Part shown: one piece after another, positions 1 to 19,400 of the stretch | Layout: every line of letters begins with the position of its first letter | Position numbering within the stretch: position 1 is the first letter of the stretch | Assembly (NCBI RefSeq): GCF_964204645.1 | Contig: NC_134031.1 | Span: 7,130,001-7,194,000, forward strand | Reading direction: 5' to 3' | DNA from: Tubulanus polymorphus | Taxonomy: Eukaryota; Animalia; Nemertea | Length of the DNA stretch: 64,000 bases | Notes under the pieces: model-generated | Database searches by the model: none | Told to the model about the DNA's origin: nothing | Seen by the model: the letters and a program-made list of their open reading frames with translations, nothing else | Position numbers and translations under genes: made by a program

Positions 1-1613
1 CGGCTTCGCTTGCAGGTCCTAGGTGGCGCAGTGCCGTTCTTACTAACAAATCTAAAGCCATATCATCGTTTAAATCTTCCATATTCATATCCGACACTTC
101 GCGAACACTTTGTCGATTCACCGAGCTGTCCTCGACAATGCCAACATCAGCAGCAGTCGAGCTGGTCGAATACTGATTGTCACTGACAACAACATCCTCC
201 GATCTTGATTTGGTTGTTTTTCTCAAAGATCTCGGTCCGAAACTTTTCAACCTGAAAAACCGAATAACGAAGCTGTCGACGCTAACTTCTCGAATTTGAA
301 AAGATCTTTCGATCAGAATGAATATCATACAAACCTTTTAATATCGAGTTGTTGATTTTCACAGTAGAGAATCAGTAAACTGATGAGAAATGCCGAAGTT
401 CTGAGACTTGAATGATTCTGCAGTTTATAAAACCAATATTTTAGATCGGTTGAAACTTGTAAACATATGAATTCGTCGTCGGTGTTTTGTTGCTGTCTGC
501 TGGTGTCCATATCTATGAATAAAACAAAGTTATCTGAATAACTCGACGTCAGGGTTCCTACAGATCATTCATTCCTGACTATATAAGGAGTTTTCAAGGA
601 GTTTTAAAGGAAAAAGTTTCAAATTTTGAGGAAGTATCTGCATTGCCTTCATATCATAATAACAGTAAACTTGTACTGTTTATCTTGGTAAACCGTTAAT
701 TCGGTGGTTTTGTAAGCGAACTTTTATCGTACACTACCTAGCACGGATTTATAATTTGGTAACCACCTAATCGGGTAAAAAGAAATCCTGGACCCAACTG
801 AACCAATCTGATTTAGGGGTAGTCTACTGTCTGTACAAAACGAACTAGACAAAAATTAATGCAATATCTTGATATTTTCTAGGCCTAATTCTATATTTTG
901 ATTGAAGGTTCGTACCTGAATGTATAGTATGACCATCAGAATTCAATCTTTTCTCAGCAATTTCCAATAACAGCGAAGTAAAAGATATATGCCCTTGATC
1001 TCCATAAGCTCGCTTCAATTTCTCCCATTTCTTTACATTTGATGCACCTGAAAAATCATCATAAAAGTATCATTCTAAATGTTTAAGCGGCTGGTAAGTA
1101 GTTGACTTTTAAGCAAGATTTCAAACAAGCAAAATACTACGGGCCAATATTAAAGAGCAGCTTTCTATGTGTCCAACTTTAAGTATAGTATCTAACTTAT
1201 AACTTCCATATTTCTGATCAGTTTTCTGATTCTTCTCTCTAGGTTAATTCACAACCTATATTAGGCCAACTAACCCTAAACCCAACTCCAATTTGACAAT
1301 CAATTATCAATAATTACCAGTCCAGTTATCATTCAGCAGTGTGCGGAGACTTACCTATGTAAATTCTCGACTTATTTTTTTCATCATCATCGAGTACTGA
1401 TTTTCTGCCAGCACCAGTTCTACGCCCACCTCGACCAGGACCAGCAGCAGCAGCGGCAGCGGCAGCGTCAGTAGTGGTAATGGGATCACTGTCCAAATCA
1501 GCACTCATCACCGAACAAGAAGAACTTGTTGAAGAAGCGCTGGTAGCTTTTTTCAGTGGCTTTTTTGCAGGCAGGCTTTTAATTTTTTTTTTCTTTCTAG
1601 AGATTTTAGCCAT
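1..1613 (-). CDS. 5' part of a spliced nuclear-protein gene (runs off window); RGGRRTGAGRK motif plus ZNF653/ZNF692-type N-terminal motif, probably a zinc-finger-family protein
   Basis: Exons 1355-1613 (ATG at 1613), 916-1047, 335-512 and 1-251 have GT-AG junctions, consistent phases (1,1,2) and no stops. Translation MAKISRKKKK...GPGRGGRRTGAGRKSVLDDDEKNKSRIYIG|ASNVKKWEKLKRAYGDQGHISFTSLLLEIAE... resembles, from memory, the R-(I/V)-x-(L/I)-G...W..L(K/R)...LL motif of ZNF653/ZNF692. No zinc fingers are visible inside the window. Confidence 0.75.
662..830. mobile_element. Degenerate MITE (ACAGTA..AC / GTCTACTGT ends)
   Basis: Imperfect terminal inverted repeats around an intronic insert with repeated ggtaacc/taatcgg motifs. 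Confidence 0.35.
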
Positions 1614-1739
1614 CGTTGACTTATTTTTCAAGATCAGATCATTACTAATCAGAAGAGTTTAATCAAACATGCTCTAGTCTAATAAACGTCAAAACGAGAA
1701 ACAAATTTATTTATTTTGTTTCGCTCACTGACCTTAACT

Positions 1740-2747: not shown

Positions 2748-5700
2748 ATGGATTCCACATCGCAAGCAACGCCGACGGCAAATGCTGCGTCAGATCTGGA
2801 TAAGATAATAAAAAATCTGGGTATCTTCATCATTTTTAGATATCAAATACAAGTGATATATGATTATAGGCCTAAAATGACATTTGTATAGCTACTGGGT
2901 GTAGCCTATAGTAATTCCGCGTCCTTAATACATTTTAGAGTTCGAAAATCAACAATATGTCAAAACACTTGAACAAGAGAGTCAACATATTGAAGGTACA
3001 TTGATAACAAATTTGATTTATCTTTGTCCCTCTCAGTTTAGCTGCGACTTGATCAATGAATTTATTTTTTTTGTAGCATTGGAAAAGTCAATCGAAGATA
3101 AAAAACAGAAGACGCAAGAAATCTTACGTTCGACGAGTCAACTGGACGAGGACACAAAACGCTATCATAAACTTTTCACTGACCTCAGAGATAATCTAGA
3201 CAGGTGACATAAACGATACGAAATTTCGTTCGTTTTCATTTCGTTCCTTGCGAAAACACATGTAGGCATCGTTTACCATGTTTACCACGTAACCATACCA
3301 TATTTTTGACGAAATAGATTAAGTAAATTCGCCGCAGCAACTTAAAGAACAGAACCTGTCAAAAATCGGAAACTGGCCGCGGCAATCAAAAACAGCCTGG
3401 GACGCAGCCTGGGACGTTCTTTCGCAATTATAGGCCTCTTTGCGAATTATCGTTATCCAGTGGAATTTCTAAAATGCGTACAAAAAAACCATTCGGAAAA
3501 AAATGAAATTCAAACATTTGTTAATATAAACTAATTTACTAAAAACGTAGATATTGTTCGGGTGGTTATACATGTACTACAGTCGATAAAATGATAGGCC
3601 CCTACGAAAAAACAAGCATTTTAAGACAGAATAGATTAGCGATAACAAGTTAAATCTACCGGTGTTGTTTTAGCTCAGAACTTCAATCTATTCGATTCAA
3701 TCAACGTGAATATTGTAGGCCTTAGAATTTCAGCATAGGTCTAGCATTTTAGCAGTTTCGAGACTATCGATTCATTCTAGTAGTCATCTTCAAAGATACC
3801 TCTTCATTTTTAGTAGATTGTTTCAGTCAATATACACTTGCAGGAGCTTTATCTTTTATACACGTACGTCACTATTTTATGTGTATCTAAGGAAGATTGT
3901 ATCGTTAAATCAAATTTTGAACTTTTGTCGCATTTTCAGTATGAAGAGTACGTCGAGTTTATTGGCCGAACACGACGAAGCGATGCGACGTAAATTGGAA
4001 CAAGTTCGTCTGGATCGTGAACACGACGAGTGAGTTGCATTTGAGGATTTTCCCTCGGACGGCAGCTTCAGCTTGTGCACACTAATTCCTAGGATGCGGG
4101 GTCAAACTAATGCGAAAAATGTGAACAACTGTGAACAATGAATGTCTGCTTAGAAGATTGAAATGTGAAATCTGTGAAATTCATGAAAATGTGTATAAAA
4201 AATTTTATGACCCTTTTATGCCATATACAATGGAGGGAACTTGTACACAAGCTGTGTTAGAGTTTAAGAAATTTCAGTTCAATCTGACTGTCCGAATTGT
4301 CAGTAAACAATGTCATAATTAGAAAATGAAAGTGAAAAAAAGTGAAAAACCTGCAAAATTACGTATGTGCAAAAAATCCGAAAAATCTTGGGATTTTCCT
4401 ACTGTGAAAAATGTAAATAGCCAATTGTTAAGGGCACGGGAAAATTGCGACCACTTGCACCTTGTTCCCCTGCCTGGATTCACCCCTGAACGAAATCTGG
4501 AATTTCCTTATCATAATGCAGGCCTATATCGTCAGGATATTTTTTTTCAGACGCGAATTTATGACGACAATGCAACATTACGAAGAGCTCTGGCAGGATT
4601 ATAAACGCAAGTACGAAACGTTCCCGCTAGCTCAGACTTTACAGAAAAAACGGCAAGAGCTGCAATGCAAGGAAAGACGTTCGCGGGAACAACGAGCGAA
4701 ATGTGAGGAGTTGAATCAAGCTATCGAAGAACTTCGGTCGCACAGAAGTGAGCACTATACCTCAATATAAAACAAATAGGAAATTGCGAGAACATCTGAA
4801 CAAATTGATACCTTGTTTCTCACTTCTGCTGGTGCCTAAAGATTGGCCGCCTATCAATCTACCCTGTGCATTACTTTTCAATCTAGTTAACCATAACGGA
4901 CCGACTGCTATGGAAATGAAATGATTATAGATTTTATTGTAGTTTACAAAAGAGACCGATCTGGCCGATTAGGAGACACAAGGTATCATTTTTGTCTAGC
5001 CTTAACTCTATTTCACGTCGAATTTTCTTTTTTTCTTTGTTGCAGAAGAAAATGAACCTCCGTTTGAGAATTTCAAGGATTTCGTTGTCAAAATGTATGT
5101 TTTTATAGCTTTATTCTCTCCTCGTATCTATTCGGCAAAATAGATGACCTTCTTATTTTCGTCGATTGATCGTTACTTTCCTTGTTTGTTGAATACAGAG
5201 CAGAAGTTAAATTAAGCTCGTCGAAAATGGAAGAAACGTTGAAACTCGATCACAATGAATACGCGCGTTTAGAACAAGAAATTCAACGTCGCCAGGAAGA
5301 GAACAGGCGCAGACAACAGGTATATTTTGAATTCTAATTCATTTCAATTTCATCTTTATATTCTACAAGAATTACAAATATTTATAAATAATTATGCAGT
5401 TTATAAAGCATAAATTGATTGGGACTGAAATAAAGGAAACAAACTGATAATACATGTAGTTACAACTTTTCATTCAATGGCACAATAAAGAAAAAAGAGA
5501 ATAGAACAGAATTATGTATAGCCACCAATTGGCTAGACCCGATATATTTATGACGTAGTGCACACGTAGACATCCTTTCAAATATAATCATTAAAATTTA
5601 TCATAAATAAGATAAGAGTTATGAAATAGGCCTATAACTAATTACAAAATAAATGCCAAAATTCACAATTGTAATTGTTGTTATTTTGAAACGCCAATTT

Positions 5701-8700
5701 TGATGACGTAGTGCACACCGACTCACACAGAACCAATTAAACAACACATGCTAGGTATCAATGTACATGAAAATTATTGTAACGGTTTTTTCGGCGTCAC
5801 AAAAGTGTATAATAAATAGAAATTTGAAGGTTACACAAAACTCAATTAAGTAAGAGATGATGAAAGTGTATATTATATGTGACCTAAAAAAACAAGAGAT
5901 TACATGTATACAATTACAAGTAACGAAATGGATTTAAAATGATACATATGTCGATTAACAGATTGTACCCAAAAATAAGAAAATAACATAAAACCTCACT
6001 ATTGAATATTACGACGTGTATCTTATATTAGGAATACGAAGAACGATTGAACAAAGAACGAAAACGAATGGAAGCCGAGAGAGATAGGCAGGCAGAGTTG
6101 GAGAGAGAGGAGGCGGAACGCCAGAGACTTGCTGACCAAGAGAGGCAACGACAAGCGGCTGAAAGGGTCGAGGCAGAAAAGAAGTTCAAGGCAGCTGAAC
6201 AAGAAAGATTGGAAGCCGAGACACGAAGAGCAGCCGAAGTGGAAAGAATGGAAGCAGCTGAGAAAAGAAGACTTGCCGAATTTGAGAGGTCCGAAGCTGG
6301 AAAACGTAACGACCATTTCAAGCCATTTACAGTTGACAAAAGTAAACAATCCGATTGGAACCGACAACATCAAGAATTCAGATGCGACCTTGAAAATCAA
6401 CTTCATCAGATAAAAACACCGCGTCTCGGGTGAATATATGGTGGTTGATTCGGGCCATTTTTAAAAATGTTTCTGAACTGCTAGAGGCCCAGTAAAATGT
6501 TTCTACATTGGCCCATTGGTTGTTTTCTTGCGCAAGAAAATAAAAAAATGGGTTGGTGTAAAATGTTTTCATCTTGTCGTACGGAAAAAAATTTCACTTA
6601 TGGCCCGAATTGAAATTTTGCATGTTCTTTCTCTAAATCTGGTATTGTTGAACGCAGAATATCGGAAACTATATTTTCAGAAACCAGGTGGCAGCATTAC
6701 AGTTACCTGTTATTGGCCAATCACCGGCCTCTGGATTGGCTTCGGACAAGCATCGGATCAATTTGGAAACATTGAAGGTATCGGCATTTATTTGCGAAAT
6801 CATTTTTCATACATTAAAACATGATTACCTCGTTTCTCCTAATCGGCCGGTCCATTTTGTAAACCGCAATGAAATTTGTTATCAGTTCATTTCCGTGGCA
6901 TTCTAATGTGTACAGACAAGCTGGCGACATTTAAGCTCTGCAGAAAGGAGAAACAAGGTATCAGTTCTTTTAGACCTTCAGTGAAATTGATTTTGGGCAT
7001 ATGAAGATATGGCTTAACTGCTTCGATTGGGTCAGTATAGCCTTATCTATATATCCGCAGATTTGTATCTTCATCATTTCGGACATCGTCAATATATACC
7101 ATAATAAGAAATGACCATTGATGAACATATTTTACCGTCACCCGGCTTCTTATGAAAAAATGGAAATTTCTTCTTAGCCTGCCGACCGACCGGATTTGAT
7201 GTTTCTAGTTTCTTTTGCCAATTGATTGGACCACATTTTTCACTGATTCTAATGAGTCAGCCGGTCATGTATGTCATGAGATCCAAGGTATATTTCTTAG
7301 CCTGCCTTTCCTTGACTAGGTTCGATCCGTCGAAAGTCGACTAGACAATAGATTGAAGCGACTGCGAGACAATTTCCTTCCATAAGCGAAGCAATATTAT
7401 GCACGCGAATTTCCGCTCTTATGTTCCAGCTTCTAATTCCACCAAGAATTTCATCGCCCAAACCGTCGTCACAACCTCAATCTATGGGTACAGAAATGAA
7501 TAAACCATCGCGGCAACCACCAATGTTTGATTTGCCGGCTACATTTGGCCGACAACGACAACAACGGGAAGAAAATACGGTAGCGCCCTCTATACCAAAT
7601 ACCTCTACCGGTAAGTGAAGTTTTATGCGGAATTTGACACAAATGTTGTTTGGGGATCTGCCCCGTCGTTGATGTCAAATGTAATTACGCTTAAATAACC
7701 TTCAAACGCACTGTCGTTTAAGGACCGTTGACTACTACCGGCACTAGATCTAAAACGCCTGAACCGAACACAACAGATTCGGAGCCTAAAACCCCAACTT
7801 CAGGTACTTCCACTGTTGAAAAATGATTGGCAGTATTTCTACTCATCATATTGGTTGAAACGTTCGTGGTTTTTGACGTTATATATTCCTAGGGGTCACT
7901 CTGGCCGACAACTGCAGTAAGAGTCCTTTTGACTTTTTCAAACACCTTGACGCAATGAAAGAGCTGGCCGCGAAGTCACCCGGGCTCGTCATACCAAACA
8001 AACCGACAGGCGACGACCTTTCCGAACATAATACACAGGTACGGTACGCCGGTGTCATAGAATGAACTCTTACCCCTTATTCATACCCCATACAATTGAA
8101 TAGATCTCAGAATTACTGGTTAGGGTTCGGGTCAGCAGTCCCATTACCATTATGACTCCACTTATTCCCACAATCTATTGCGGGGGCATCTGATTCTATG
8201 ACACCAGTATTTCCGAGTGATACTCCGTTAATACAGTCCACATTGCCTGGAATTTTCTTAGTAAAATACGCAAAGCTCTGTTCAAATTTTCAGGGAAGCA
8301 AAACACCGGAAATGACGTCGAATTTTTTCTCAGCGTTTTTCGGCGCCGGTGACTCTACTGATACGAATGACGTTTTTCAAACACAAGGTGATTACAATCC
8401 GTTCAAATGTCAAATCGGTTGATGGCATATGTTCCTCGATGAGTTCTGGAATATATTCATTTAATGAACCATCGTTTACTTACAGCGTGTTTATCTACTA
8501 TAGAAATGAATAGGAGATTGTAAAAATTTACATCGTATTACCGGGAGTTTCGTATTAACGTGATCGTACTAAACAAACGTGTTCATAGCTAAAATGCTAT
8601 GTATAAGAGAAGCCGGGAATTCTTAAATTTTATCCGAGGTTTTCGTTGTAAACCGAATCGTACTTACGAGGTTCGACTGTATGAAGTCCGACGACTTTTG

Positions 8701-9701
8701 CCCTTCTGCATCTCACACACCGTTAACGCTTTGGAAATCTGTTTCATTCCACCGTCCAGGTTGTATCGGCCTGGCCCGCCGCCTTTTTCGGACATTCACA
8801 ATTCGTTGTGCGAAATCTGACCGATCACACTTTTTGAAAGCGTTCTGGCGTTTGAATTGCATTCGCTGGCGGCTCGTTTTCGAATAGAAAACGTCTCGGG
8901 TGAAGTTCTGAACCCGTGTAAAGCTTGACGAAAATAAATTCGAAGACGGCGATCAAGAATACGATATGATTTTTATTCTAATCTTATGCATTTTAAAATA
9001 CATGTATTAGCTTTAATCGTCGTTAGTATTCACATACGAATTAAAAGGCAATGACATTCACAGATGAGGCACAAAGTTCTGTTCTTAGTCAGGGGCGGAT
9101 CCAGGGGCTGTGAGACTTGAACAAGTGCATCAAACTTTTTCGGTGCCTTTTACACTTTTTGAACGAAGATAATTAGCACATTTCAGTGCGGGAGTAAAAC
9201 CTATAGAATTGTCTTTTTGGACATCGAAGTGCTCTTTTGGGATGTGACAAATCCTTCAAAATTGGCCCCGGATATGCCCGAGTTTAGAATTATAAGGATG
9301 ACGATTGCTTATTGCCGAAAGGTTTTCCAAAAATTTACGGATCTCTATCTATACTGTATGGACCTTTGTTTTATTGGCCCATATTGTCCAGCCTCGAGTG
9401 CTCGTCTCGGCATGCTCTAGATTGTTAAAACATATCATGATATCGTTTTTCAGGTGAGAATATTTTCGGTAAATCAGGCTTCGGCGATAGTTCGGTGAAA
9501 TCTCCGGAGATCGGCGGATTTTGCGGATTCGGTGCCGCGACCGATACCGACGAGGAAGTCGGCGCTCTGTCGTCGATATTCGGCCCAGCTAACGATAATG
9601 CGGACGACGCGGACGCCGGCGTCGACGACAACTTCTGTTTCAATTTCGGTTCCAGTTGCAAAAGTCCGGAAGTTGGTAGCGCTTTCGGCAGTTTGTTTTA
9701 G
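2748..9701 (+). CDS. SIX6OS1: SIX6OS1/C14orf39-like synaptonemal complex central element protein (about 666 aa; N-terminal coiled coil, charged helical insert, Phe-rich disordered C-terminus)
   Basis: Exons 2748-2820, 2939-2995, 3077-3203, 3940-4029, 4551-4747, 5046-5094, 5199-5319, 6032-6429, 6681-6777, 6916-6957, 7430-7610, 7723-7803, 7893-8038, 8294-8387, 9454-9701. All are GT-AG and phase-consistent; total 2001 nt, no internal stops. Collinear similarity to human SIX6OS1 as recalled: DLDKIIKNL/SLDRLLLEF, SMKSTSSLLAEHDEAM/NWKPTCDVFRKHEDYM, HYEELWQDYKRKYETFPLAQTLQKKRQE/QYKEVLKQYQLKYSETPFSREYYEKKRE, PPFENFKDFVVKI/APFPSLTKWTLNI, KSPGL/RSPGL, DDNFCFNFG/DDFSFPFSFG. The gene structure is more certain than the name. 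Confidence 0.75.
8049..8207. mobile_element. MITE with GGTGTCATAGAAT terminal inverted repeats
   Basis: ccGGTGTCATAGAAT ... ATTCTATGACACCag; internal ggttagggtt motif. Confidence 0.6.
8481..8681. mobile_element. Degenerate pogo/Tigger-type MITE
   Basis: Right end CGAGGTTCGACTGTA (reverse of TACAGTCGAACCTCG), TA-flanked; internal cgtatta/cgtact repeats. The left end is decayed. Confidence 0.45.
9090..9281. mobile_element. CAGGGGCGGATCCAGG MITE, decayed right end
   Basis: Left CAGGGGCGGATCCAGGGG; right ccccggatatgcccg. Confidence 0.5.
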
Positions 9702-13140: not shown

Positions 13141-13481
13141 TTAGTAAACTTCCACGTGATTTGACGTATTTCCAGGCGGGTAATCCTGGTATCCTCCGTC
13201 CGACTCGGTGACGTCATGCGGAACCATACGGGGATGCCCCATCGGTGGTCCATGACCCATATAATTGTCACTGGGCATCATCTGCTGTTGTCCGAGGCTA
13301 GGAATGTTTGGGGAATGGCGACCTATGTAGTGCGCACCGGGCGATATGTTATTATTAAAGTGCATCCAATTCTCGTTCGGAGGCGTTCCCGGTGGTATAA
13401 CGGGCACCTGTCCAATACTAGGTTCTCTGTCCATCGGTCCCGAGCCGTACAAATCGCCATCCAAACTACTGTCAAGGTCAT
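13141..13481 (-). CDS. Lhx3: Lhx3/4 last coding exon (Pro/Gly/His-rich C-terminus)
   Basis: Acceptor tttcag| at 13482, phase 1; [18 protein letters not shown]...HVEVY*. Confidence 0.85.
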
Positions 13482-16400
13482 CTGAAAGACGAAACGCATA
13501 TGGTTGTAATGTAAGTTCACATTATACGCGATTGATGAAAATATCAATTCTAGAATTTTTGTCCGCTCTATATTTGAACGGTTGGCAGCTTATAACGTAT
13601 TCTTTATCACATTGTTTCCAGGTAACATTTGTGATGTGACATGGGAATGGCACGCGCGCGGTAATTGTTTGACTCGTGCGGCCCGAATTCAGATTATTTA
13701 TACCGATACCGGCTTCGGTGGAAAAAAAACGCGATAGAAAATTTATGACGATTTTTATTCGAGGATAACTACTACATAAAATTTCATACGCGGTTGCATA
13801 GATGCGGGTCGACTGTTTGTTTTAGTTTAAAAAAAATTCTTCTGTTTGGAAATCAAATAAAAGGCGTACCGAACTGTCGGTCAACAAAGGTCACCTAAGG
13901 CTGGCTTATGTCGACAAGCGACGCGACGCCTACTGACTCCTAGCGACGCAACTGAGAGCAACCGCGATCGCAGCCCAGCTTATGTCGACTGCGCTCCGAT
14001 TCGCAGCAATTGAGGCCGTTACGAGATCCTCCCAGTTGCTTCCCTGCTTATGTCGGTTATGATTACTGGCAACTGCAATGGCTCAGATGGTCCCGTGAGT
14101 TGGTCACGTGATAAGCATTTTGAGAATAAATTTGAATTATTTTGAATTATTAGGAAATATATTTCTATTAGAAAAGCTATTTCTTTAAGATCTTTATCTT
14201 TCTTTCTTGTCGACATAAGCCAGCAATTTAAGTCGGTTGTGATCGAAAGCAACTGTCCGCCGGAGTAGAACATGGGCAACTAGCCGGATACGGCTTGCTA
14301 CGAGTCGGTAGGCGTCGGGTTGCCGTCGCAAGCCGGCTTATGTCGAACCGATAGAGCAGCAACTGGCGGCCTCTCGTAGGTCGCAAGTTGCCGCGAATCG
14401 GCGATAAACCCAGTTGCGTCGGTAGGCGTCGCGTTGCTTGTCGACATACGCCAGCCTTAACATAAGTGATTTCGATGAAAGCCATAGAATAAATGTTATG
14501 AAACTTACTTTGATATGAAATGTCAAGGTCATCAGATCGTTCATCTGCGCTTTGGCCACCTTCCGTATCGCTATGGCTACCTCGACTGTGTTTAGATCCC
14601 CGGAAGTAAGGACTCCATCTCTGTCTTCCGGCGTCTTTCTTTAACCGTTTTTCTTTCGCTCGTCGGTTTTGAAACCATACCTGGATATAGCAAATTTATC
14701 GAGCGTCAAAATTGTGCAAAGCATCAAGAAATACCGATCGCAAATATTGAAAATAGTTCGCGATGGTTAAAAGTTGATTTGACTAGATTTTTCTTCACTT
14801 TTTAAATTAAAGATAGAATAGAATATTATGTATTTCATGATTTCGAGTAATTCATTGTGCACACGTACCTGTACAACTCTCATATCTAAACCAGTTTCAG
14901 CGCTCAATTGTTCTCTGACGTGTCGAGCCGGTTTAGGACTTTCATTGTAAGCACGTTTTAAAGCTTCTAGTTGTTTCGCCGTTATAGTCGTGCGCGGTCG
15001 TTTGTTCGCATTGTCAATATCAAATTCTGTAACAGATAAAAAATACGGAGATGATAAGTCAGAAAAATATAGATTCATATCAACTGCTATTCTAGTGAGA
15101 TGGGCATATTCAATTCAATTCAAAATATATTCATTGCTCCGTAATGACTTTTTACATTTTTGGTTTTGCGCAATGAAGAATGAAATATAAAAGATATAGA
15201 AAATATGAAAAATTTTAACAGTTTTTGTACTATTTACATGGCGGAGGTTATACGCATGTTCTGTTATAAATTTCTTTTGCTCAGCCATTTATATACACGA
15301 AGGTCATGAGCTATCAGGGGTGAGGACATTATGATGTTGAATTGTTTTCAGATGTCGTAAATTATTGGGTCGGGGAAATGAGCATCAAAGAAATAGTTCA
15401 CTTCGTGTAGTTAATCAAATACTTTGATATGATCGGTCTCGTACTAGAATCAAACATGGGCCATATAGCCTGGTCATGGAATCGAGAACCGGACACCGAA
15501 TTTCAGAAAATGCGTGGCCTCGATTATCTAACCTAGTATAAGTTCATTATCATAAAAAGAATATCTTTATTTTTTGTTTGTTAAAACAGTAGAACCATCA
15601 TCAAAATAGAAGGAAATTTACCTCGTGCTTTAGCGCTTTCATAATCGGATTTACAGACGAGTTTTCGGTCTTCCATCAAGTAAAATTCATCCCCAGTATT
15701 CAACTGTCTGTTGCACATCATACAAGCGAAACATTCCAAGTGGTACACGTAGTCCTGTGCTCGACGTACCACTTGCGTTGGCGGTATACCCTGATCACAT
15801 CCGGCACACTTGGTACCAAACCTTCTGTAACAAACATGAAACGTCAGTTGGTGTATGGTTTGGAATAGCCTGGCGGACCTGAGGCTTAAGCCTGGGGCCA
15901 GTAGTTCAAAAGTTGACCCCGGTTGCTCTAAAGTTGGTTAAAGATTACCGGCGGATAAATGCCAATATAGTTACAATTAAATTTTAATTGTCACATGCCA
16001 ACTATCCACCGGTTAACTCTAACCGACTGTTGAAACTGGCCCCTGGTTTTACATATATGAAAAGATCGATCTTTAGCTATCTGAGAACGTTGAGGTGTCA
16101 ATAAACTATATTTACATTTCAGTGTGATTTTGCTATAGCTTGTCTTGTTTTCAATGAATAAATAATGCATGGAATAAAAAGATGGTATTCATTCTTTCTT
16201 ATGATGTATACCTTTATTTAGTCATATTTCTTTTCAGAAAGTTGCGACCTGTAACTTTTTTTCAACAACACAAAAATACAGTTTTTCTTTCTTAAGTAAC
16301 CGGTGCATTTATTAGTTGGAGACGCATAAAAAGGAAATGAAGTAAAATAGAAACATTCATCTTTTTTAGTTTCGTATGATGTACTTTGTTGTGAAGATCC

Positions 16401-19400
16401 GAGAACAGTCTGTTGACAGATTGATAGCTAGGTCACCACCGTAGGGGAAAGTTTAATCAAGATTAATCCTCACCTGAAGAAATCCTCTTTACAATAGACT
16501 TTATCTCCTTTTGAGAAGCATTTATCACTGAGTTGCGTGTGACAATCGGCGCATTTCAGACACTTCGAATGCCACGATCTGTCTAAAACCTTCAGTATAA
16601 ACCTGTCCAAAATCGGCTCGGTACACCCGGCACATTTAGGAATGGCGGCTGAAAAATACAACGATACATCATCATGAATAAGACTTAATTATTACGAAAA
16701 AATGATGGTCACATTTCCTTTATTACGCATCAGAGAAAATCTCGTAGCTTTCTGCGAAATTCGTGCATCACGATGAATAGTGCAACAGATATATTGTCAT
16801 ACTTATAGGTGGGACACGTTCATAGTGTTATAGTTTGAATCAGTTGTTCGCAGTTTCGGAATTTAAAATTCAAAAATTATTCATCATTTCATTTCCGTTT
16901 AGTTGAAGAGGGTACGAAACAAAGGAAATATTAGATAGGCTATTGAGTTCTTTGTGCGTAAGCTGAAGAATCCCTGGTGTAAAGGGGACAGTCACAGTAA
17001 GGATATGTTAAACTAATTACGATCACTATGCTGTATATTGCCGCCATTTTCAATTCGGATAATTCGAGTTGATGAGGCCAGAAATTGAATTATTTGTCAT
17101 TATTTGTCGGTTGCCTAGCGCGCTGTCGGGCTTTGGTGCGAGCCATTATTCCAGATGGTTTAAACACCCATAACGTAGTAGATCGATAGTTAACTGAATT
17201 ATAGAGAATTGGTTTGGACAGCTCTTGGTGTCAGTCTGAAGTGCAATGCTAGTCATCCTCAAACTGCCTATTATCCAATACGACAACGCACGCTCGCTTC
17301 ACTAGGAGACAGTCTCGTATTCGTCAAAGCGAAACTATCTTAAGGCTGAAAATTTTCAGCTTCAGGGGCGGACCCAGTAGGGGTTCCCCCTACAAACAAT
17401 TTTTCGAGTGCCCCTACTTTTCTAGCCCGATTTTTCTGTACGTTTTATAAATACATCTATTTACAGTTTCACAGTTGCTGTAACGTATAATGAGTTCAGG
17501 TGCCATGAAAAGACACTGAAATAAGTCAAAAGTCACTGAAATAAGTCTAGATTTTCAGGATTTTCTTGGGAGGGGGATATACCCTGCCTACAGCTTCGCA
17601 CTTTCGGTGCTCCGCACAGCGCCGGCTATGGAGTATCGTTGCCCTTTGTTCTGCAGCCCTTTGAAGAAATCCTAGATCCGTCCCTGAATTTCAAGCCTTT
17701 ATACAGGTCAACGAAGATGTTATCTCTCCTATTATGTATATACTTGATTTTACCATAAATGTATCAGTCGTAAACAATGTTTTTATGTGTATGCTGAATA
17801 AAGTATGCATTGAATTGTAAAAGAACACTCCATGATTCCGAGTCTGTACGAGTGTACGTTTAATAGTTTTGGTTCATTGAGGAAAACGCCGATTGGCCGC
17901 CATATTGCCTTCGCGATAAATCGATCTTCGCCTGATGAAAAGTTTTAAACGAGCACATTTCCACTGTCAGACTTTGCCGCGTTTTACCAATAAAACTGGA
18001 GATTTATGCGGGATATTCTGTGTAGGTTTATGTGGATATATGGAAGGTTTAATGTAATGCAGGGTGGGATTAAAACTGACTAGCCGGTTATTTATTGTTT
18101 GGGGTGACGCTGAAACACGGAGACTTAAGACGAAATAGATACGATCAATTAGACCTATACTATACGATGGTAAAGCACGAGGAGCAAAAATATTCGAAAA
18201 AGGTCCGCAGGCAATGCATGAACTGATTATCATTTTCCTCAACGTTTTTTATTAGAGAAAGCTCTAGGTTGTCAATTTAACGTCAGTGCGCGTAATTTTT
18301 GCCAATTAAGTGCAAGCGGTTGATTGAAGTAAAAAGTTACAATTGACTGCAATGGTGAACCGCAATATCAGCTTATCCCACCAGAAGGTTTGACGAGCAA
18401 TCAATCTTACGTTATCAAAATCAGTTAATTTCCAATGAACTTTTAAACTGAATTTTTATGTTCCCGAATTCATATATTATCATCGAATGTACAATGAATT
18501 CATTTTTTCTACTCAGGTATGGGTATAGTTTTCATTTAATAATTGATTCATTTTAAGAAAAAAAAATTCGCTCCATTTTAATTTTAGTTTTCATTAATAA
18601 CTGATCAAGAAAAGTTCGAGCAACTGCTAGCGAACCCGGTGGATCCTCGCCTGCCATAAGTAAAATCTTTGATTGCCGCAAGAGGTTGGAGGTTCTCCAT
18701 TCCACGGCCACTATAAAGCACTGTCAGAACGACACGATTTTACTTTTTCAATTATTGGTCAGTTCACTCGATCTGAGAGGATTACTTTTAAAAATGCGTA
18801 CACCGACTTCATTTCGTCGGCCGACAAATTGCGAATGCCCGCCGTAGCAGAAGAGATGTAGTGGTTTGATGATACGCCGGGATGAAGACGGATATAACCA
18901 GGTGATATCCAGTGATGCGATGAAGTCATTGATCACTCGGGTTTGGTTGACAAGGCGTGTACAGTCACACATTAACCCGATTATAGACAGAATCAATCGA
19001 GAGTGAATGTGTATAAGAGAGCTCGAACACCGCTAAGAGATCAAATATGACAACCGCGGAATTCTCGATTAGTTTTAGATATTGGAAGAAAAGCGTCTAG
19101 ACAACCTTTATAGTAAAAGTGCTAGCCTTTACTAACAATATATAAAAGAAACATCAGAAAGTTACTTATAGCTGCCAATTAATTCATCGAATATACCATG
19201 TCATTCAACATTTGTATTTTGGATAAGTTATTTCTGTTTTGAGTAACAACCATCGTATACATTGCTCCTCACTTAAAGATATGGATAGATAATTTGTTCA
19301 TGATATTTCTACATTTTCTCCAGATTTTTTCAATTATTTCTCGTTGTTTTTGTTTTTTTCTTTTGTGACTCTTGAGGGAGATACATAACGCAAGCACCGG

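What the first reader, a model, noticed from the sequence alone, without database searches (positions are those of the whole stretch)
2748..9701. Probable invertebrate orthologue of synaptonemal-complex protein SIX6OS1, outside its vertebrate SIX6 context
Seen: a clean 15-exon, 666-aa model that the ORF track shows only as fragments. By-eye comparison with human SIX6OS1 (recalled) is collinear and nearly gap-free over the first ~220 aa and again at the C-terminus. Central-element proteins diverge fast and are usually left as uncharacterised outside vertebrates, so this sequence could bridge vertebrate SIX6OS1 and divergent proteins such as nematode SYP-4. Here the gene is tail-to-tail with Lhx3/4 rather than opposite SIX6.
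Basis: partly seen in the sequence, partly recalled or inferred. Interest (0 to 1): 0.8.

Follow-up and report, generated by a model that had tools for sequence, protein, structure and literature searches.

The report
Ribbon-worm-type SIX6OS1 meiosis gene
This is a real, single-copy invertebrate gene of the SIX6OS1 family, which in mice helps zip paired chromosomes together in meiosis. Such invertebrate members are already in databases and were published in 2026, so it is a sound annotation and not a discovery.

Summary
Window 2748-9701 (+) carries a 15-exon, all GT-AG, 2001-nt reading frame of 666 aa.

- Exon 5, searched alone against 1.84 billion proteins, finds mollusc proteins first: a chiton "tensin-1-like", a Patella "uncharacterized" protein and a Lottia "hypothetical" protein.
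- Those proteins match Pfam S6OS1 above its cut-off of 27 bits (68, 43 and 34 bits).
- A profile of the three molluscs hits only this gene's exons, in order, in the window. In the whole 268-Mb genome it hits only this locus.
- The first seven exons share sizes and phases with Patella: 73/57/127/90/197/49/121 against 70/57/127/90/188/49/112 nt. A mouse sequence printed in a paper is consistent with one shared intron.
- The tail is acidic and Phe/Gly-rich, with one FxFxF motif.

All four Six genes lie on another contig. The downstream neighbour is an Lhx3/4-type gene, tail to tail.

Caveats:
- Single exons of the window do not reach Pfam S6OS1.
- Exons 8-12 and 14 rest on frame and splice sites only.
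- I obtained no RNA data, and the partner gene SYCE1 was not found.
- The joined protein was not sent to any search tool.

Novelty is low. Pfam already tags the mollusc proteins, Nematostella SIX6OS1 was published in 2026, and the SYP-4/Corolla link has already been proposed.

The parts
2748..2820 (+). Exon 1 (73 nt), start codon at 2748; encodes the ...DLDKII... N-terminus
   Evidence: First ATG after a stop, GT donor. Patella and Lottia exon 1 is 70 nt with the same phase. Weak local match to Lottia residues 13-22, z 3.0.
2939..2995 (+). Exon 2 (57 nt, enters in phase 1)
   Evidence: Same size and phase as Patella and Lottia exon 2. 12/18 identical to Patella residues 25-42, z 12.5. Matches mollusc profile positions 23-43.
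3077..3203 (+). Exon 3 (127 nt, phase 1)
   Evidence: Same size and phase in Patella and Lottia. Profile positions 42-84, domain E 9.8e-09. z 15.3 against the chiton protein.
3940..4029 (+). Exon 4 (90 nt, phase 2)
   Evidence: Same size and phase in Patella and Lottia. Aligns end to end with Patella residues 86-114, z 7.9.
4551..4747 (+). Exon 5 (197 nt, phase 2); most conserved block, ...HY..LW.DYK.KYETFPLAQTL...
   Evidence: phmmer against 1.84 billion proteins: chiton P0002 at E 2.3e-08 and 49% identity, at the collinear position 120-176. Profile positions 120-181, E 7e-17. Patella exon 5 is 188 nt with the same phase.
5046..5094 (+). Exon 6 (49 nt, phase 1)
   Evidence: Identical size and phase to Patella exon 6. 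The sequence match alone is not significant.
5199..5319 (+). Exon 7 (121 nt, phase 2)
   Evidence: Patella exon 7 is 112 nt with the same phase. The placement on chiton residues 193-240 is collinear but not significant.
6032..6429 (+). Exon 8 (398 nt): Glu/Arg/Ala/Lys-rich stretch of about 130 aa, probably a charged helix or coiled coil
   Evidence: Long open frame with composition E28 R22 A16 K11 of 132 residues. There is no homology support; molluscs have a shorter Glu/Lys-rich stretch at this point.
6681..6777 (+). Exon 9 (97 nt), model only
   Evidence: Frame and AG/GT sites only; no homology.
6916..6957 (+). Exon 10 (42 nt), model only
   Evidence: Frame and AG/GT sites only; no homology.
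7430..7610 (+). Exon 11 (181 nt): Pro/Ser/Gln-rich linker
   Evidence: Frame and splice sites. Its composition resembles the mollusc middle region, but the match is not significant.
7723..7803 (+). Exon 12 (81 nt): Thr/Pro-rich, ends in a ...PKTP... site
   Evidence: Frame and splice sites. In the fragment alignment a P-K/E-T-P motif lines up just upstream of the conserved motif in all three molluscs. The match is not significant on its own.
7893..8038 (+). Exon 13 (146 nt, phase 1), with the conserved short motif SPFD..KHL..M....KSP starting at 7922
   Evidence: Profile positions 548-572, E 0.004 within the window. tblastn E 0.004 (Lottia) and 0.02 (Patella). z 7.9 and 5.8. The motif-bearing exon enters in phase 1 in all three genes, at 146, 155 and 167 nt.
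8294..8387 (+). Exon 14 (94 nt): ...NFFSAFF... stretch
   Evidence: Frame and splice sites. By eye it resembles the chiton ...PFFQSFF... stretch, but the match is not significant.
9454..9701 (+). Exon 15 (248 nt, phase 1) and TAG stop: acidic Gly/Ser/Phe-rich tail with FCFNF at 9633-9647, ending ...FGSLF
   Evidence: F 10/81, G 13/81, net charge -11. The molluscs have one or two FxFxF motifs and end in F. The last intron is phase 1 in all three genes. z 3.4 against the chiton protein.

Best explanation
The locus is the single-copy SIX6OS1-family (Pfam S6OS1) gene of this invertebrate. Earlier notes of the scan call the organism a ribbon worm; I did not check that. Its product most likely works as SIX6OS1 does in mouse and Nematostella.

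Shown here:
- The gene model is intact.
- It is orthologous to mollusc S6OS1-family genes by sequence, order of matches and intron positions.
- Those mollusc genes belong to Pfam S6OS1.
- The gene is single copy and is unlinked to any Six gene.

Inferred from published work on relatives, not shown here:
- The helical N-terminal part (exons 1-7, about 235 aa) would bind the central-element protein SYCE1 and help build the middle of the synaptonemal complex between paired chromosomes.
- A long charged helix (exon 8) and a floppy Ser/Thr/Pro-rich linker (exons 9-12) would carry two short conserved pieces: the SPFD..KHL..KSP motif in exon 13 and the acidic, phenylalanine-rich tail with FxFxF in exon 15.
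- That tail would act as a docking surface, as the similar tail of C. elegans SYP-4 recruits the crossover factor ZHP-3.
- SYCE1 binding, location in the complex, the role of the tail and germline expression are therefore all untested for this gene.
For: Model: 15 exons, all GT-AG, 666 aa.

First link, window to molluscs:
- Exon 5 alone finds chiton P0002 (E 2.3e-08, 49% identity, collinear position) and Patella P0008 as the best full-length hits among 1.84 billion proteins.
- A profile of the three mollusc proteins, run against all 3477 six-frame pieces of the window, hits only exons 2, 3, 4, 5 and 13, in order.
- The same profile against the whole genome hits only this locus.
- The first six introns have the same positions and phases as in Patella, and the first four as in Lottia; the last-intron phase is also shared.

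Second link, molluscs to the family:
- Pfam S6OS1 (cut-off 27 bits) scores P0016 at 68.1 bits (E 7.6e-19), P0014 at 43.1, P0002 at 34.2 and P0008 at 32.2. No other family exceeds 18 bits.
- The public records already carry PF15676.
- The nearest clusters to the Patella protein in the ESM Atlas are chordate 'Protein SIX6OS1' (0.95, 211 of 256 features).

Vertebrate gene structure: the mouse Six6os1 sequence printed in PMC7467691 shows an intron inside codons 10-21 and a phase-1 intron in codon 36. With the 7-8 residue N-terminal offset, this fits window introns 1 and 2 and a 57-nt exon.

Function in relatives:
- Mouse SIX6OS1 residues 1-67 and 1-262 bind SYCE1, and deleting residues 10-21 abolishes synapsis (PMC7467691).
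- Nematostella SYCE1 and SIX6OS1 interact in yeast two-hybrid assays (PMC13693662).
- The window's tail matches the FxFxF, acidic, Gly-rich tail described for SYP-4 and SIX6OS1.
Against: - No single exon of the window, nor the open frame spanning exons 2 and 3, reaches Pfam S6OS1 even at E 10. The six-frame search of the genome with PF15676 was also blank. Family membership is therefore transitive.
- The Pfam match of the mollusc proteins covers only profile positions 1 to about 245. Their C-terminal parts do not hit the profile.
- Exons 8-12 and 14 have no support beyond frame and splice sites.
- A SYCE1 gene was not convincingly found. The only candidate scores 14 bits and does not look like SYCE1.
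- The mouse intron comparison rests on an assumed residue offset.
Confidence: 0.85

Rival explanations
1. The gene is a true S6OS1-family homologue whose job has drifted. It would be expressed outside meiosis or no longer be a structural part of the synaptonemal complex, and the conserved N-domain would serve another helical partner.
For: No expression data were obtained and no SYCE1 gene was found in the genome. Exon 8 adds a charged helix of about 130 aa that is much shorter in molluscs. The Nematostella study reports that conserved synaptonemal-complex proteins can differ in role.
Against: The gene is single copy. The SYCE1-binding N-terminal part and the tail motifs are both conserved. The SYCE1-SIX6OS1 interaction is kept from mouse to sea anemone. 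The blank SYCE1 search means little, because the same kind of search also missed S6OS1 at this very locus.
Confidence: 0.1
2. It is an unrelated coiled-coil or low-complexity protein, for example tensin-like as NCBI names the chiton relative, or an enkurin-domain protein. The S6OS1 resemblance would then be compositional.
For: NCBI calls P0002 'tensin-1-like'. Two short exon-5-like fragments, P0004 and P0007, score 22-29 bits on Pfam Enkurin. The protein is rich in charged helices.
Against: P0002 has no tensin domain; S6OS1 is its only Pfam hit. Window exon 5 gives no Enkurin hit. P0016 reaches 68 bits on S6OS1, whereas every generic coiled-coil family stays at or below 18 bits. The exon matches survive composition-preserving shuffles at z up to 23. 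Intron positions are shared. The two large repeat hits, P0003 and P0005, are bacterial Cna_B adhesins whose scores are inflated by repeats.
Confidence: 0.03
3. The family call is right but the model is partly wrong. Some of exons 8-12 and 14 would be mis-chosen, or there would be other isoforms, so the true protein differs from 666 aa.
For: These exons have no homology support. Patella has three annotated isoforms of 739, 646 and 543 aa. Intron 2 is 81 nt, in frame and free of stops, so retaining it would keep the frame.
Against: All junctions are canonical and the frame closes exactly onto the conserved exons 13 and 15. The composition of exons 11-12 fits the mollusc linker.
Confidence: 0.3

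Closest known systems
Vertebrate SIX6OS1 / C14orf39 (Pfam PF15676, S6OS1)
   Same: The N-terminal helical domain is linked through mollusc orthologues that match profile positions 1 to about 245. The C-terminal half is long, disordered and Ser/Thr/Pro-rich. The tail is acidic and Phe-rich. The phase-1 intron after the second coding exon appears to be shared with mouse.
   Different: The gene does not sit opposite a Six gene; all Six genes are on another contig. The N-terminus is 7-8 residues longer. There is an extra Glu/Arg-rich helix of about 130 aa (exon 8). Similarity of the window's exons to the Pfam profile is too low to score exon by exon.
Mollusc S6OS1-family proteins: Patella vulgata LOC126821654 (XP_050406074.1), Lottia gigantea LOTGIDRAFT_229018, Liolophura sinensis 'tensin-1-like isoform X2'
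   Same: Identity is 45-67% in exons 2, 3 and 5. Sizes and phases are identical for exons 2-4 and 6. The SPFD..KHL..KSP motif is shared. All have FxFxF motifs and end in F.
   Different: The middle regions cannot be aligned. No Lhx gene lies within 10 kb of the Patella or Lottia genes. The window's tail has one FxFxF motif, whereas Patella and Lottia have two.
Nematostella vectensis SIX6OS1 (Sci Adv 2026, PMC13693662)
   Same: It is an invertebrate member of the same named family. It shows that the family and its SYCE1 interaction predate bilaterians.
   Different: I had no Nematostella sequence, so there is no direct comparison. That protein was tested by yeast two-hybrid; this one has not been tested.
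C. elegans SYP-4 and Drosophila Corolla (proposed SIX6OS1 orthologues)
   Same: All have a disordered, acidic, Gly- and Phe-rich C-terminus with F-x-F-x-F motifs, as described in bioRxiv 10.1101/2020.02.16.947804 and PMC12602556.
   Different: Sequence homology to them was not tested here. Their N-terminal parts are not known to match S6OS1, and the orthology proposal rests mainly on tail composition.

Membership tests
S6OS1 / SIX6OS1 (Pfam PF15676) | The window's own sequence scores above the Pfam gathering cut-off of 27 bits | tested here: inconclusive
Ten exons scanned singly, and the open frame spanning exons 2 and 3, gave no S6OS1 hit at E up to 10. The six-frame genome search with PF15676 was blank. 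The exons are 14-132 aa, too short for a 557-position profile.
S6OS1 / SIX6OS1 (Pfam PF15676) | The closest full-length relatives are family members (transitive, reciprocal test) | tested here: met
   The best full-length hits of exon 5 are P0002 and P0008. On S6OS1, P0016 scores 68.1 bits, P0014 43.1, P0002 34.2 and P0008 32.2. The mollusc profile finds only this locus in the genome.
S6OS1 / SIX6OS1 (Pfam PF15676) | Conserved helical N-terminal domain in the same order as the family (human residues 1-261 per PMC5095591) | tested here: met
   Exons 2-5 match mollusc profile positions 23-181 in order. That region of the molluscs aligns to Pfam positions 1-189 and 1-244. Helicity itself was not computed.
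S6OS1 / SIX6OS1 (Pfam PF15676) | Disordered C-terminal half with S/T-P sites and conserved patches, and an acidic Phe-rich end with FxFxF | tested here: met
   One search shows S/T-P sites in exons 8, 9 and 11-15. Exon 15 has F 10/81, net charge -11, FCFNF, and ends in F. The feature is as described. This similarity is at the level of motif and composition; the Pfam profile does not score the mollusc tails.
S6OS1 / SIX6OS1 (Pfam PF15676) | Intron positions shared with the vertebrate gene | tested here: inconclusive
   Six introns are shared with Patella. For mouse I had only the printed oligo sequence in PMC7467691. It shows an intron within codons 10-21 and a phase-1 intron in codon 36. This fits window introns 1 and 2 if the N-terminal offset is 7-8 residues. 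The human exon table could not be consulted.
S6OS1 / SIX6OS1 (Pfam PF15676) | Head-to-head position opposite SIX6 (the origin of the name, not a property of the protein) | tested here: not met
   The four Six-domain genes lie on contig C1 and the window on C7. The divergent upstream neighbour is a C2H2 zinc-finger open frame.
S6OS1 / SIX6OS1 (Pfam PF15676) | Binds SYCE1 and lies in the central element | not testable with these tools
   No SYCE1 gene was identified; the only candidate scores 14 bits and is unconvincing. No complex prediction was available.
S6OS1 / SIX6OS1 (Pfam PF15676) | Germline or meiotic expression | not tested
SYP-4 / Corolla (proposed orthologues) | Sequence homology beyond tail composition | not tested
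Only the tail motif class is shared.
Tensin (NCBI name of the chiton relative) | Tensin domains (phosphatase/C2, SH2, PTB) | tested here: not met
   S6OS1 is the only Pfam family on P0002.
Enkurin domain (PF13864) | Match to the Enkurin profile above its cut-off | tested here: not met
   Window exon 5 gives no Enkurin hit. Only two short fragments from other species reach 22-29 bits, and they carry the S6OS1 exon-5 motif.

The most novel reading that the evidence does not exclude
Lophotrochozoan proteins such as this one combine a scorable S6OS1 N-domain with the SYP-4-type FxFxF tail and a previously undescribed SPFD..KHL..KSP motif. They sit next to unnamed arthropod clusters in protein-language-model space. 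Used as intermediates in profile chaining, they could turn the composition-based proposal 'SIX6OS1 = SYP-4 = Corolla' into a demonstrated homology and point to a conserved docking motif for crossover control.
Probability: 0.25. Interest if true: 0.55.

Novelty: new member of a known kind. Interest (0 to 1): 0.3.

Why it matters
The paper that defined SIX6OS1 in 2016 placed its origin in cartilaginous fish (PMC5095591). This gene adds another phylum with a clear orthologue that keeps its intron positions, which agrees with the 2026 Nematostella work that the family is ancient.

Practical value:
- It gives this locus a correct name. Its mollusc relatives are labelled 'uncharacterized', 'hypothetical' or, wrongly, 'tensin-1-like'.
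- It provides a further intermediate sequence for anyone testing whether nematode SYP-4 and fly Corolla are true orthologues.

It does not open a new question by itself.

Tried and rejected
- Pfam on single exons and on the exon 2-3 open frame gave nothing. PF15676 against the genome in six frames also gave nothing.
- The word-index protein search on exon 5 found no candidates, because its length window excludes full-length relatives.
- The two later word searches, with P0002 and with alignment A1, returned only the chiton and Lottia proteins. Low-complexity words filled the candidate list.
- The ESM Atlas search on exon 5 alone was uninformative.
- The Protein Data Bank holds no SIX6OS1-like chain; the best hit was CSM1 at E 0.0018, a generic coiled coil.
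- Six-frame searches of the genome with the SYCE1, TEX12 and SYCP3 (Cor1) profiles gave only sub-threshold exon hits. An SCP-1 exon reached 24 bits.
- P0003 and P0005 from the big search are bacterial Cna_B repeat adhesins and were rejected as spurious.
- Adjacency of an Lhx3/4 gene is not seen within 10 kb in Patella or Lottia. P0002 has no gene on record, so the chiton locus could not be checked.
- The joined 666-aa model was built only inside local scripts, to check frame, length and composition.
Full report
**Observation**

Fifteen exons, every intron GT..AG, sum to 2001 nt. This gives 666 codons and a TAG stop at 9699-9701 with no internal stop. Exon sizes are 73, 57, 127, 90, 197, 49, 121, 398, 97, 42, 181, 81, 146, 94 and 248 nt. 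The mechanical ORF list shows only pieces of the gene.

The joined protein was built only inside local scripts, to check frame, length and composition, and was not sent to any search tool.

**Direct family tests on the window**

Scanned singly against Pfam, ten exons give no S6OS1 hit even at E 10. The same is true of the open frame that runs through exon 2, intron 2 and exon 3. A six-frame search of the whole 268-Mb assembly with PF15676 is also blank. The word-index search with exon 5 found nothing, because it considers only proteins of similar length. Direct membership is thus not shown, but pieces of 14-132 aa are a poor test against a 557-position profile.

**Link to relatives**

I searched exon 5 (65 aa) without a length limit against 1.84 billion representative proteins and got 13 hits at E 0.001 or better.
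- The best full-length hits are P0002 (788 aa, E 2.3e-08, 49% identity, at the collinear position 120-176) and P0008 (646 aa).
- According to their public records these are Liolophura sinensis 'tensin-1-like isoform X2' and Patella vulgata 'uncharacterized protein LOC126821654'.
- The full-length Patella isoform is P0016. Lottia gigantea LOTGIDRAFT_229018 (P0014) was added.
- Most other hits are short exon-sized fragments, and the ones I read carry the same motif.
- Two large hits are bacterial Cna_B repeat adhesins whose scores are summed over repeats. I rejected them.

**Are the relatives SIX6OS1?**

On Pfam S6OS1 (cut-off 27 bits), P0016 scores 68.1 bits (E 7.6e-19, profile positions 1-189). 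P0014 scores 43.1, P0002 34.2 (positions 2-244) and P0008 32.2. No other family exceeds 18 bits. The public records already carry PF15676. The nearest clusters to P0016 in the ESM Atlas are chordate 'Protein SIX6OS1' (score 0.95, 211 of 256 shared features), and nine of the ten best named hits share that family. P0002 has no tensin domain, so its NCBI name is misleading.

**Is the window gene their orthologue?**

- I built a profile from the three mollusc proteins (alignment A1) and ran it against all 3477 six-frame pieces of the 64-kb window. The only meaningful hits (E 0.004 or better) are exons 2, 3, 5 and 13, in order, at profile positions 23-43, 42-84, 120-181 (E 7e-17) and 548-572. Exon 4 (85-114) appears collinearly at E about 5, level with one chance hit on the other strand.
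- Against the whole genome, the same profile hits only C7:7132935-7134749, which is this locus. The gene is therefore single copy.
- Local alignments against composition-preserving shuffles give z values of 6.7-23 for the best mollusc match of exons 2-5 and 13, and about 3 for exons 1 and 15. Exons 6-12 and 14 are not above the shuffles.

**Gene structure**

I mapped P0016 and P0014 exactly onto their genomic loci L007 and L008.
- Patella has coding exons of 70, 57, 127, 90, 188, 49 and 112 nt, and so on.
- Lottia has 70, 57, 127, 90 and 188 nt, and so on.
- The window has 73, 57, 127, 90, 197, 49 and 121 nt.
- Entry phases are identical: 0, 1, 1, 2, 2, 1, 2, then 0.
- Window exons 2-4, 6 and 7 align to the residues of the matching Patella exons.
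- The motif-bearing exon (146, 155 and 167 nt) enters in phase 1 in all three genes, and the last intron is phase 1 in all three.

For vertebrates I had no sequence from a tool. However, PMC7467691 prints a mouse Six6os1 repair oligo and amplicon sizes.
- It shows a 92-nt intron inside codons 10-21 and a GTAAGT donor after the first base of codon 36, which is phase 1.
- Window intron 2 is phase 1 in codon 44, and Patella's is in codon 43.
- The 7-8 residue offset agrees with Pfam position 1 falling on Patella residue 38, if the 557-position profile starts near residue 31 of the 587-residue protein. That is my inference.
- It would make the mouse exon 57 nt long. This is consistent with a shared exon but is not proof.

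**Tail and motifs**

- Exon 13 carries SPFD..KHL..M....KSP starting at 7922, which is conserved in all three molluscs.
- Exon 15 has F 10 of 81 residues, against 32 of 666 in the whole protein. It also has G 13 and net charge -11, contains FCFNF at 9633-9647, and ends ...FGSLF.
- The molluscs have one or two FxFxF motifs and end in F.
- This is the tail type described for SYP-4 and SIX6OS1 by Köhler et al..
- The Pfam profile does not score the mollusc tails, so this similarity is at the level of motif and composition only.

**Context**

- Downstream on the minus strand lies a LIM-homeobox gene, with exons at 16470-16661, 15581-15772, 14767-15078, about 14677, and 13141-13464.
- Its LIM1 exon matches Lhx4 and Lhx3 at 107 and 103 bits, against about 60 bits for ISL1 and LMO4. 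The tail-to-tail Lhx3/4 arrangement is thus confirmed.
- No Lhx gene lies within 10 kb in Patella or Lottia.
- All four Six-domain genes lie on contig C1.
- Upstream, on the minus strand, a stop-free frame of about 690 aa with C2H2 zinc fingers runs from window position 337 out past the window's start. The divergent neighbour is therefore a zinc-finger gene and not a Six gene.

**Mechanism**

Shown here: gene integrity, orthology to mollusc S6OS1 genes, their family membership, and copy number.

Inferred from relatives:
- The N-terminal part binds SYCE1. In mouse, residues 1-67 bind the SYCE1 core and a second site lies within residues 1-262. Deleting residues 10-21 abolishes synapsis.
- The Nematostella pair also interacts.
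- The Phe-rich tail would serve crossover control, as in SYP-4, which recruits ZHP-3.

I could not find SYCE1 in this genome. The one candidate scores 14 bits and does not look like SYCE1. The same kind of search also missed S6OS1 at this locus, so the blank result means little. An SCP-1-like exon scores 24 bits.

**Novelty**

- The 2016 paper placed the origin of SIX6OS1 in cartilaginous fish.
- Pfam nevertheless already tags the mollusc proteins.
- A 2026 paper reports Nematostella SIX6OS1 with SYCE1 binding, and reports that several synaptonemal-complex orthologues, which it does not name in the text, occur in sponges and comb jellies.
- SYP-4 and Corolla have already been proposed as orthologues.
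- Notes by other agents name the genome as the ribbon worm Tubulanus polymorphus. I did not check this.

Noticed in passing
window 1-337 (-) continuing upstream to C7:7128269 (L012:3268-4998); also window 1332-1658 (-): A stop-free frame of about 690 aa on the minus strand carries C2H2 zinc fingers and a short-period repeat region. A possible first exon (MAKISRKKKK...) lies about 1.1 kb from the SIX6OS1-like start codon. The gene thus seems to share a divergent promoter region with a zinc-finger gene and not with a Six gene.
   Followed up: partly
window 2996-3076: Intron 2 is 81 nt, in frame and free of stops, so retaining it would insert 27 residues without breaking the frame. The homologues have no insertion at this point.
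   Followed up: partly
P0004, P0007 (short fragments from other species): Exon-5-like S6OS1 fragments score 22-29 bits on Pfam Enkurin (cut-off 23.6). This is probably a false family call on a helical fragment.
   Followed up: no
ESM Atlas neighbours of P0016: Ten unnamed 'hypothetical protein' clusters, commonest in arthropods (about 676 aa), score 0.94, right next to the chordate SIX6OS1 clusters. They may be unrecognised arthropod members of the family.
   Followed up: no
P0002 (Liolophura sinensis record): NCBI names this S6OS1-family protein 'tensin-1-like isoform X2', although it has no tensin domain. This is a likely misannotation caused by its low-complexity middle region.
   Followed up: partly
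G000:C1:28895414-28895548 (L002): An exon matches Pfam SCP-1 (SYCP1) positions 61-105 at 24 bits, just above the cut-off. It is a candidate transverse-filament gene of this genome.
   Followed up: no
G000:C1:11263105-11380836 and C1:2213359-2213691: Three Six-domain genes are clustered within about 120 kb, with a fourth 9 Mb away on the same contig. This looks like the usual Six1/2-Six3/6-Six4/5 cluster plus one extra copy.
   Followed up: no
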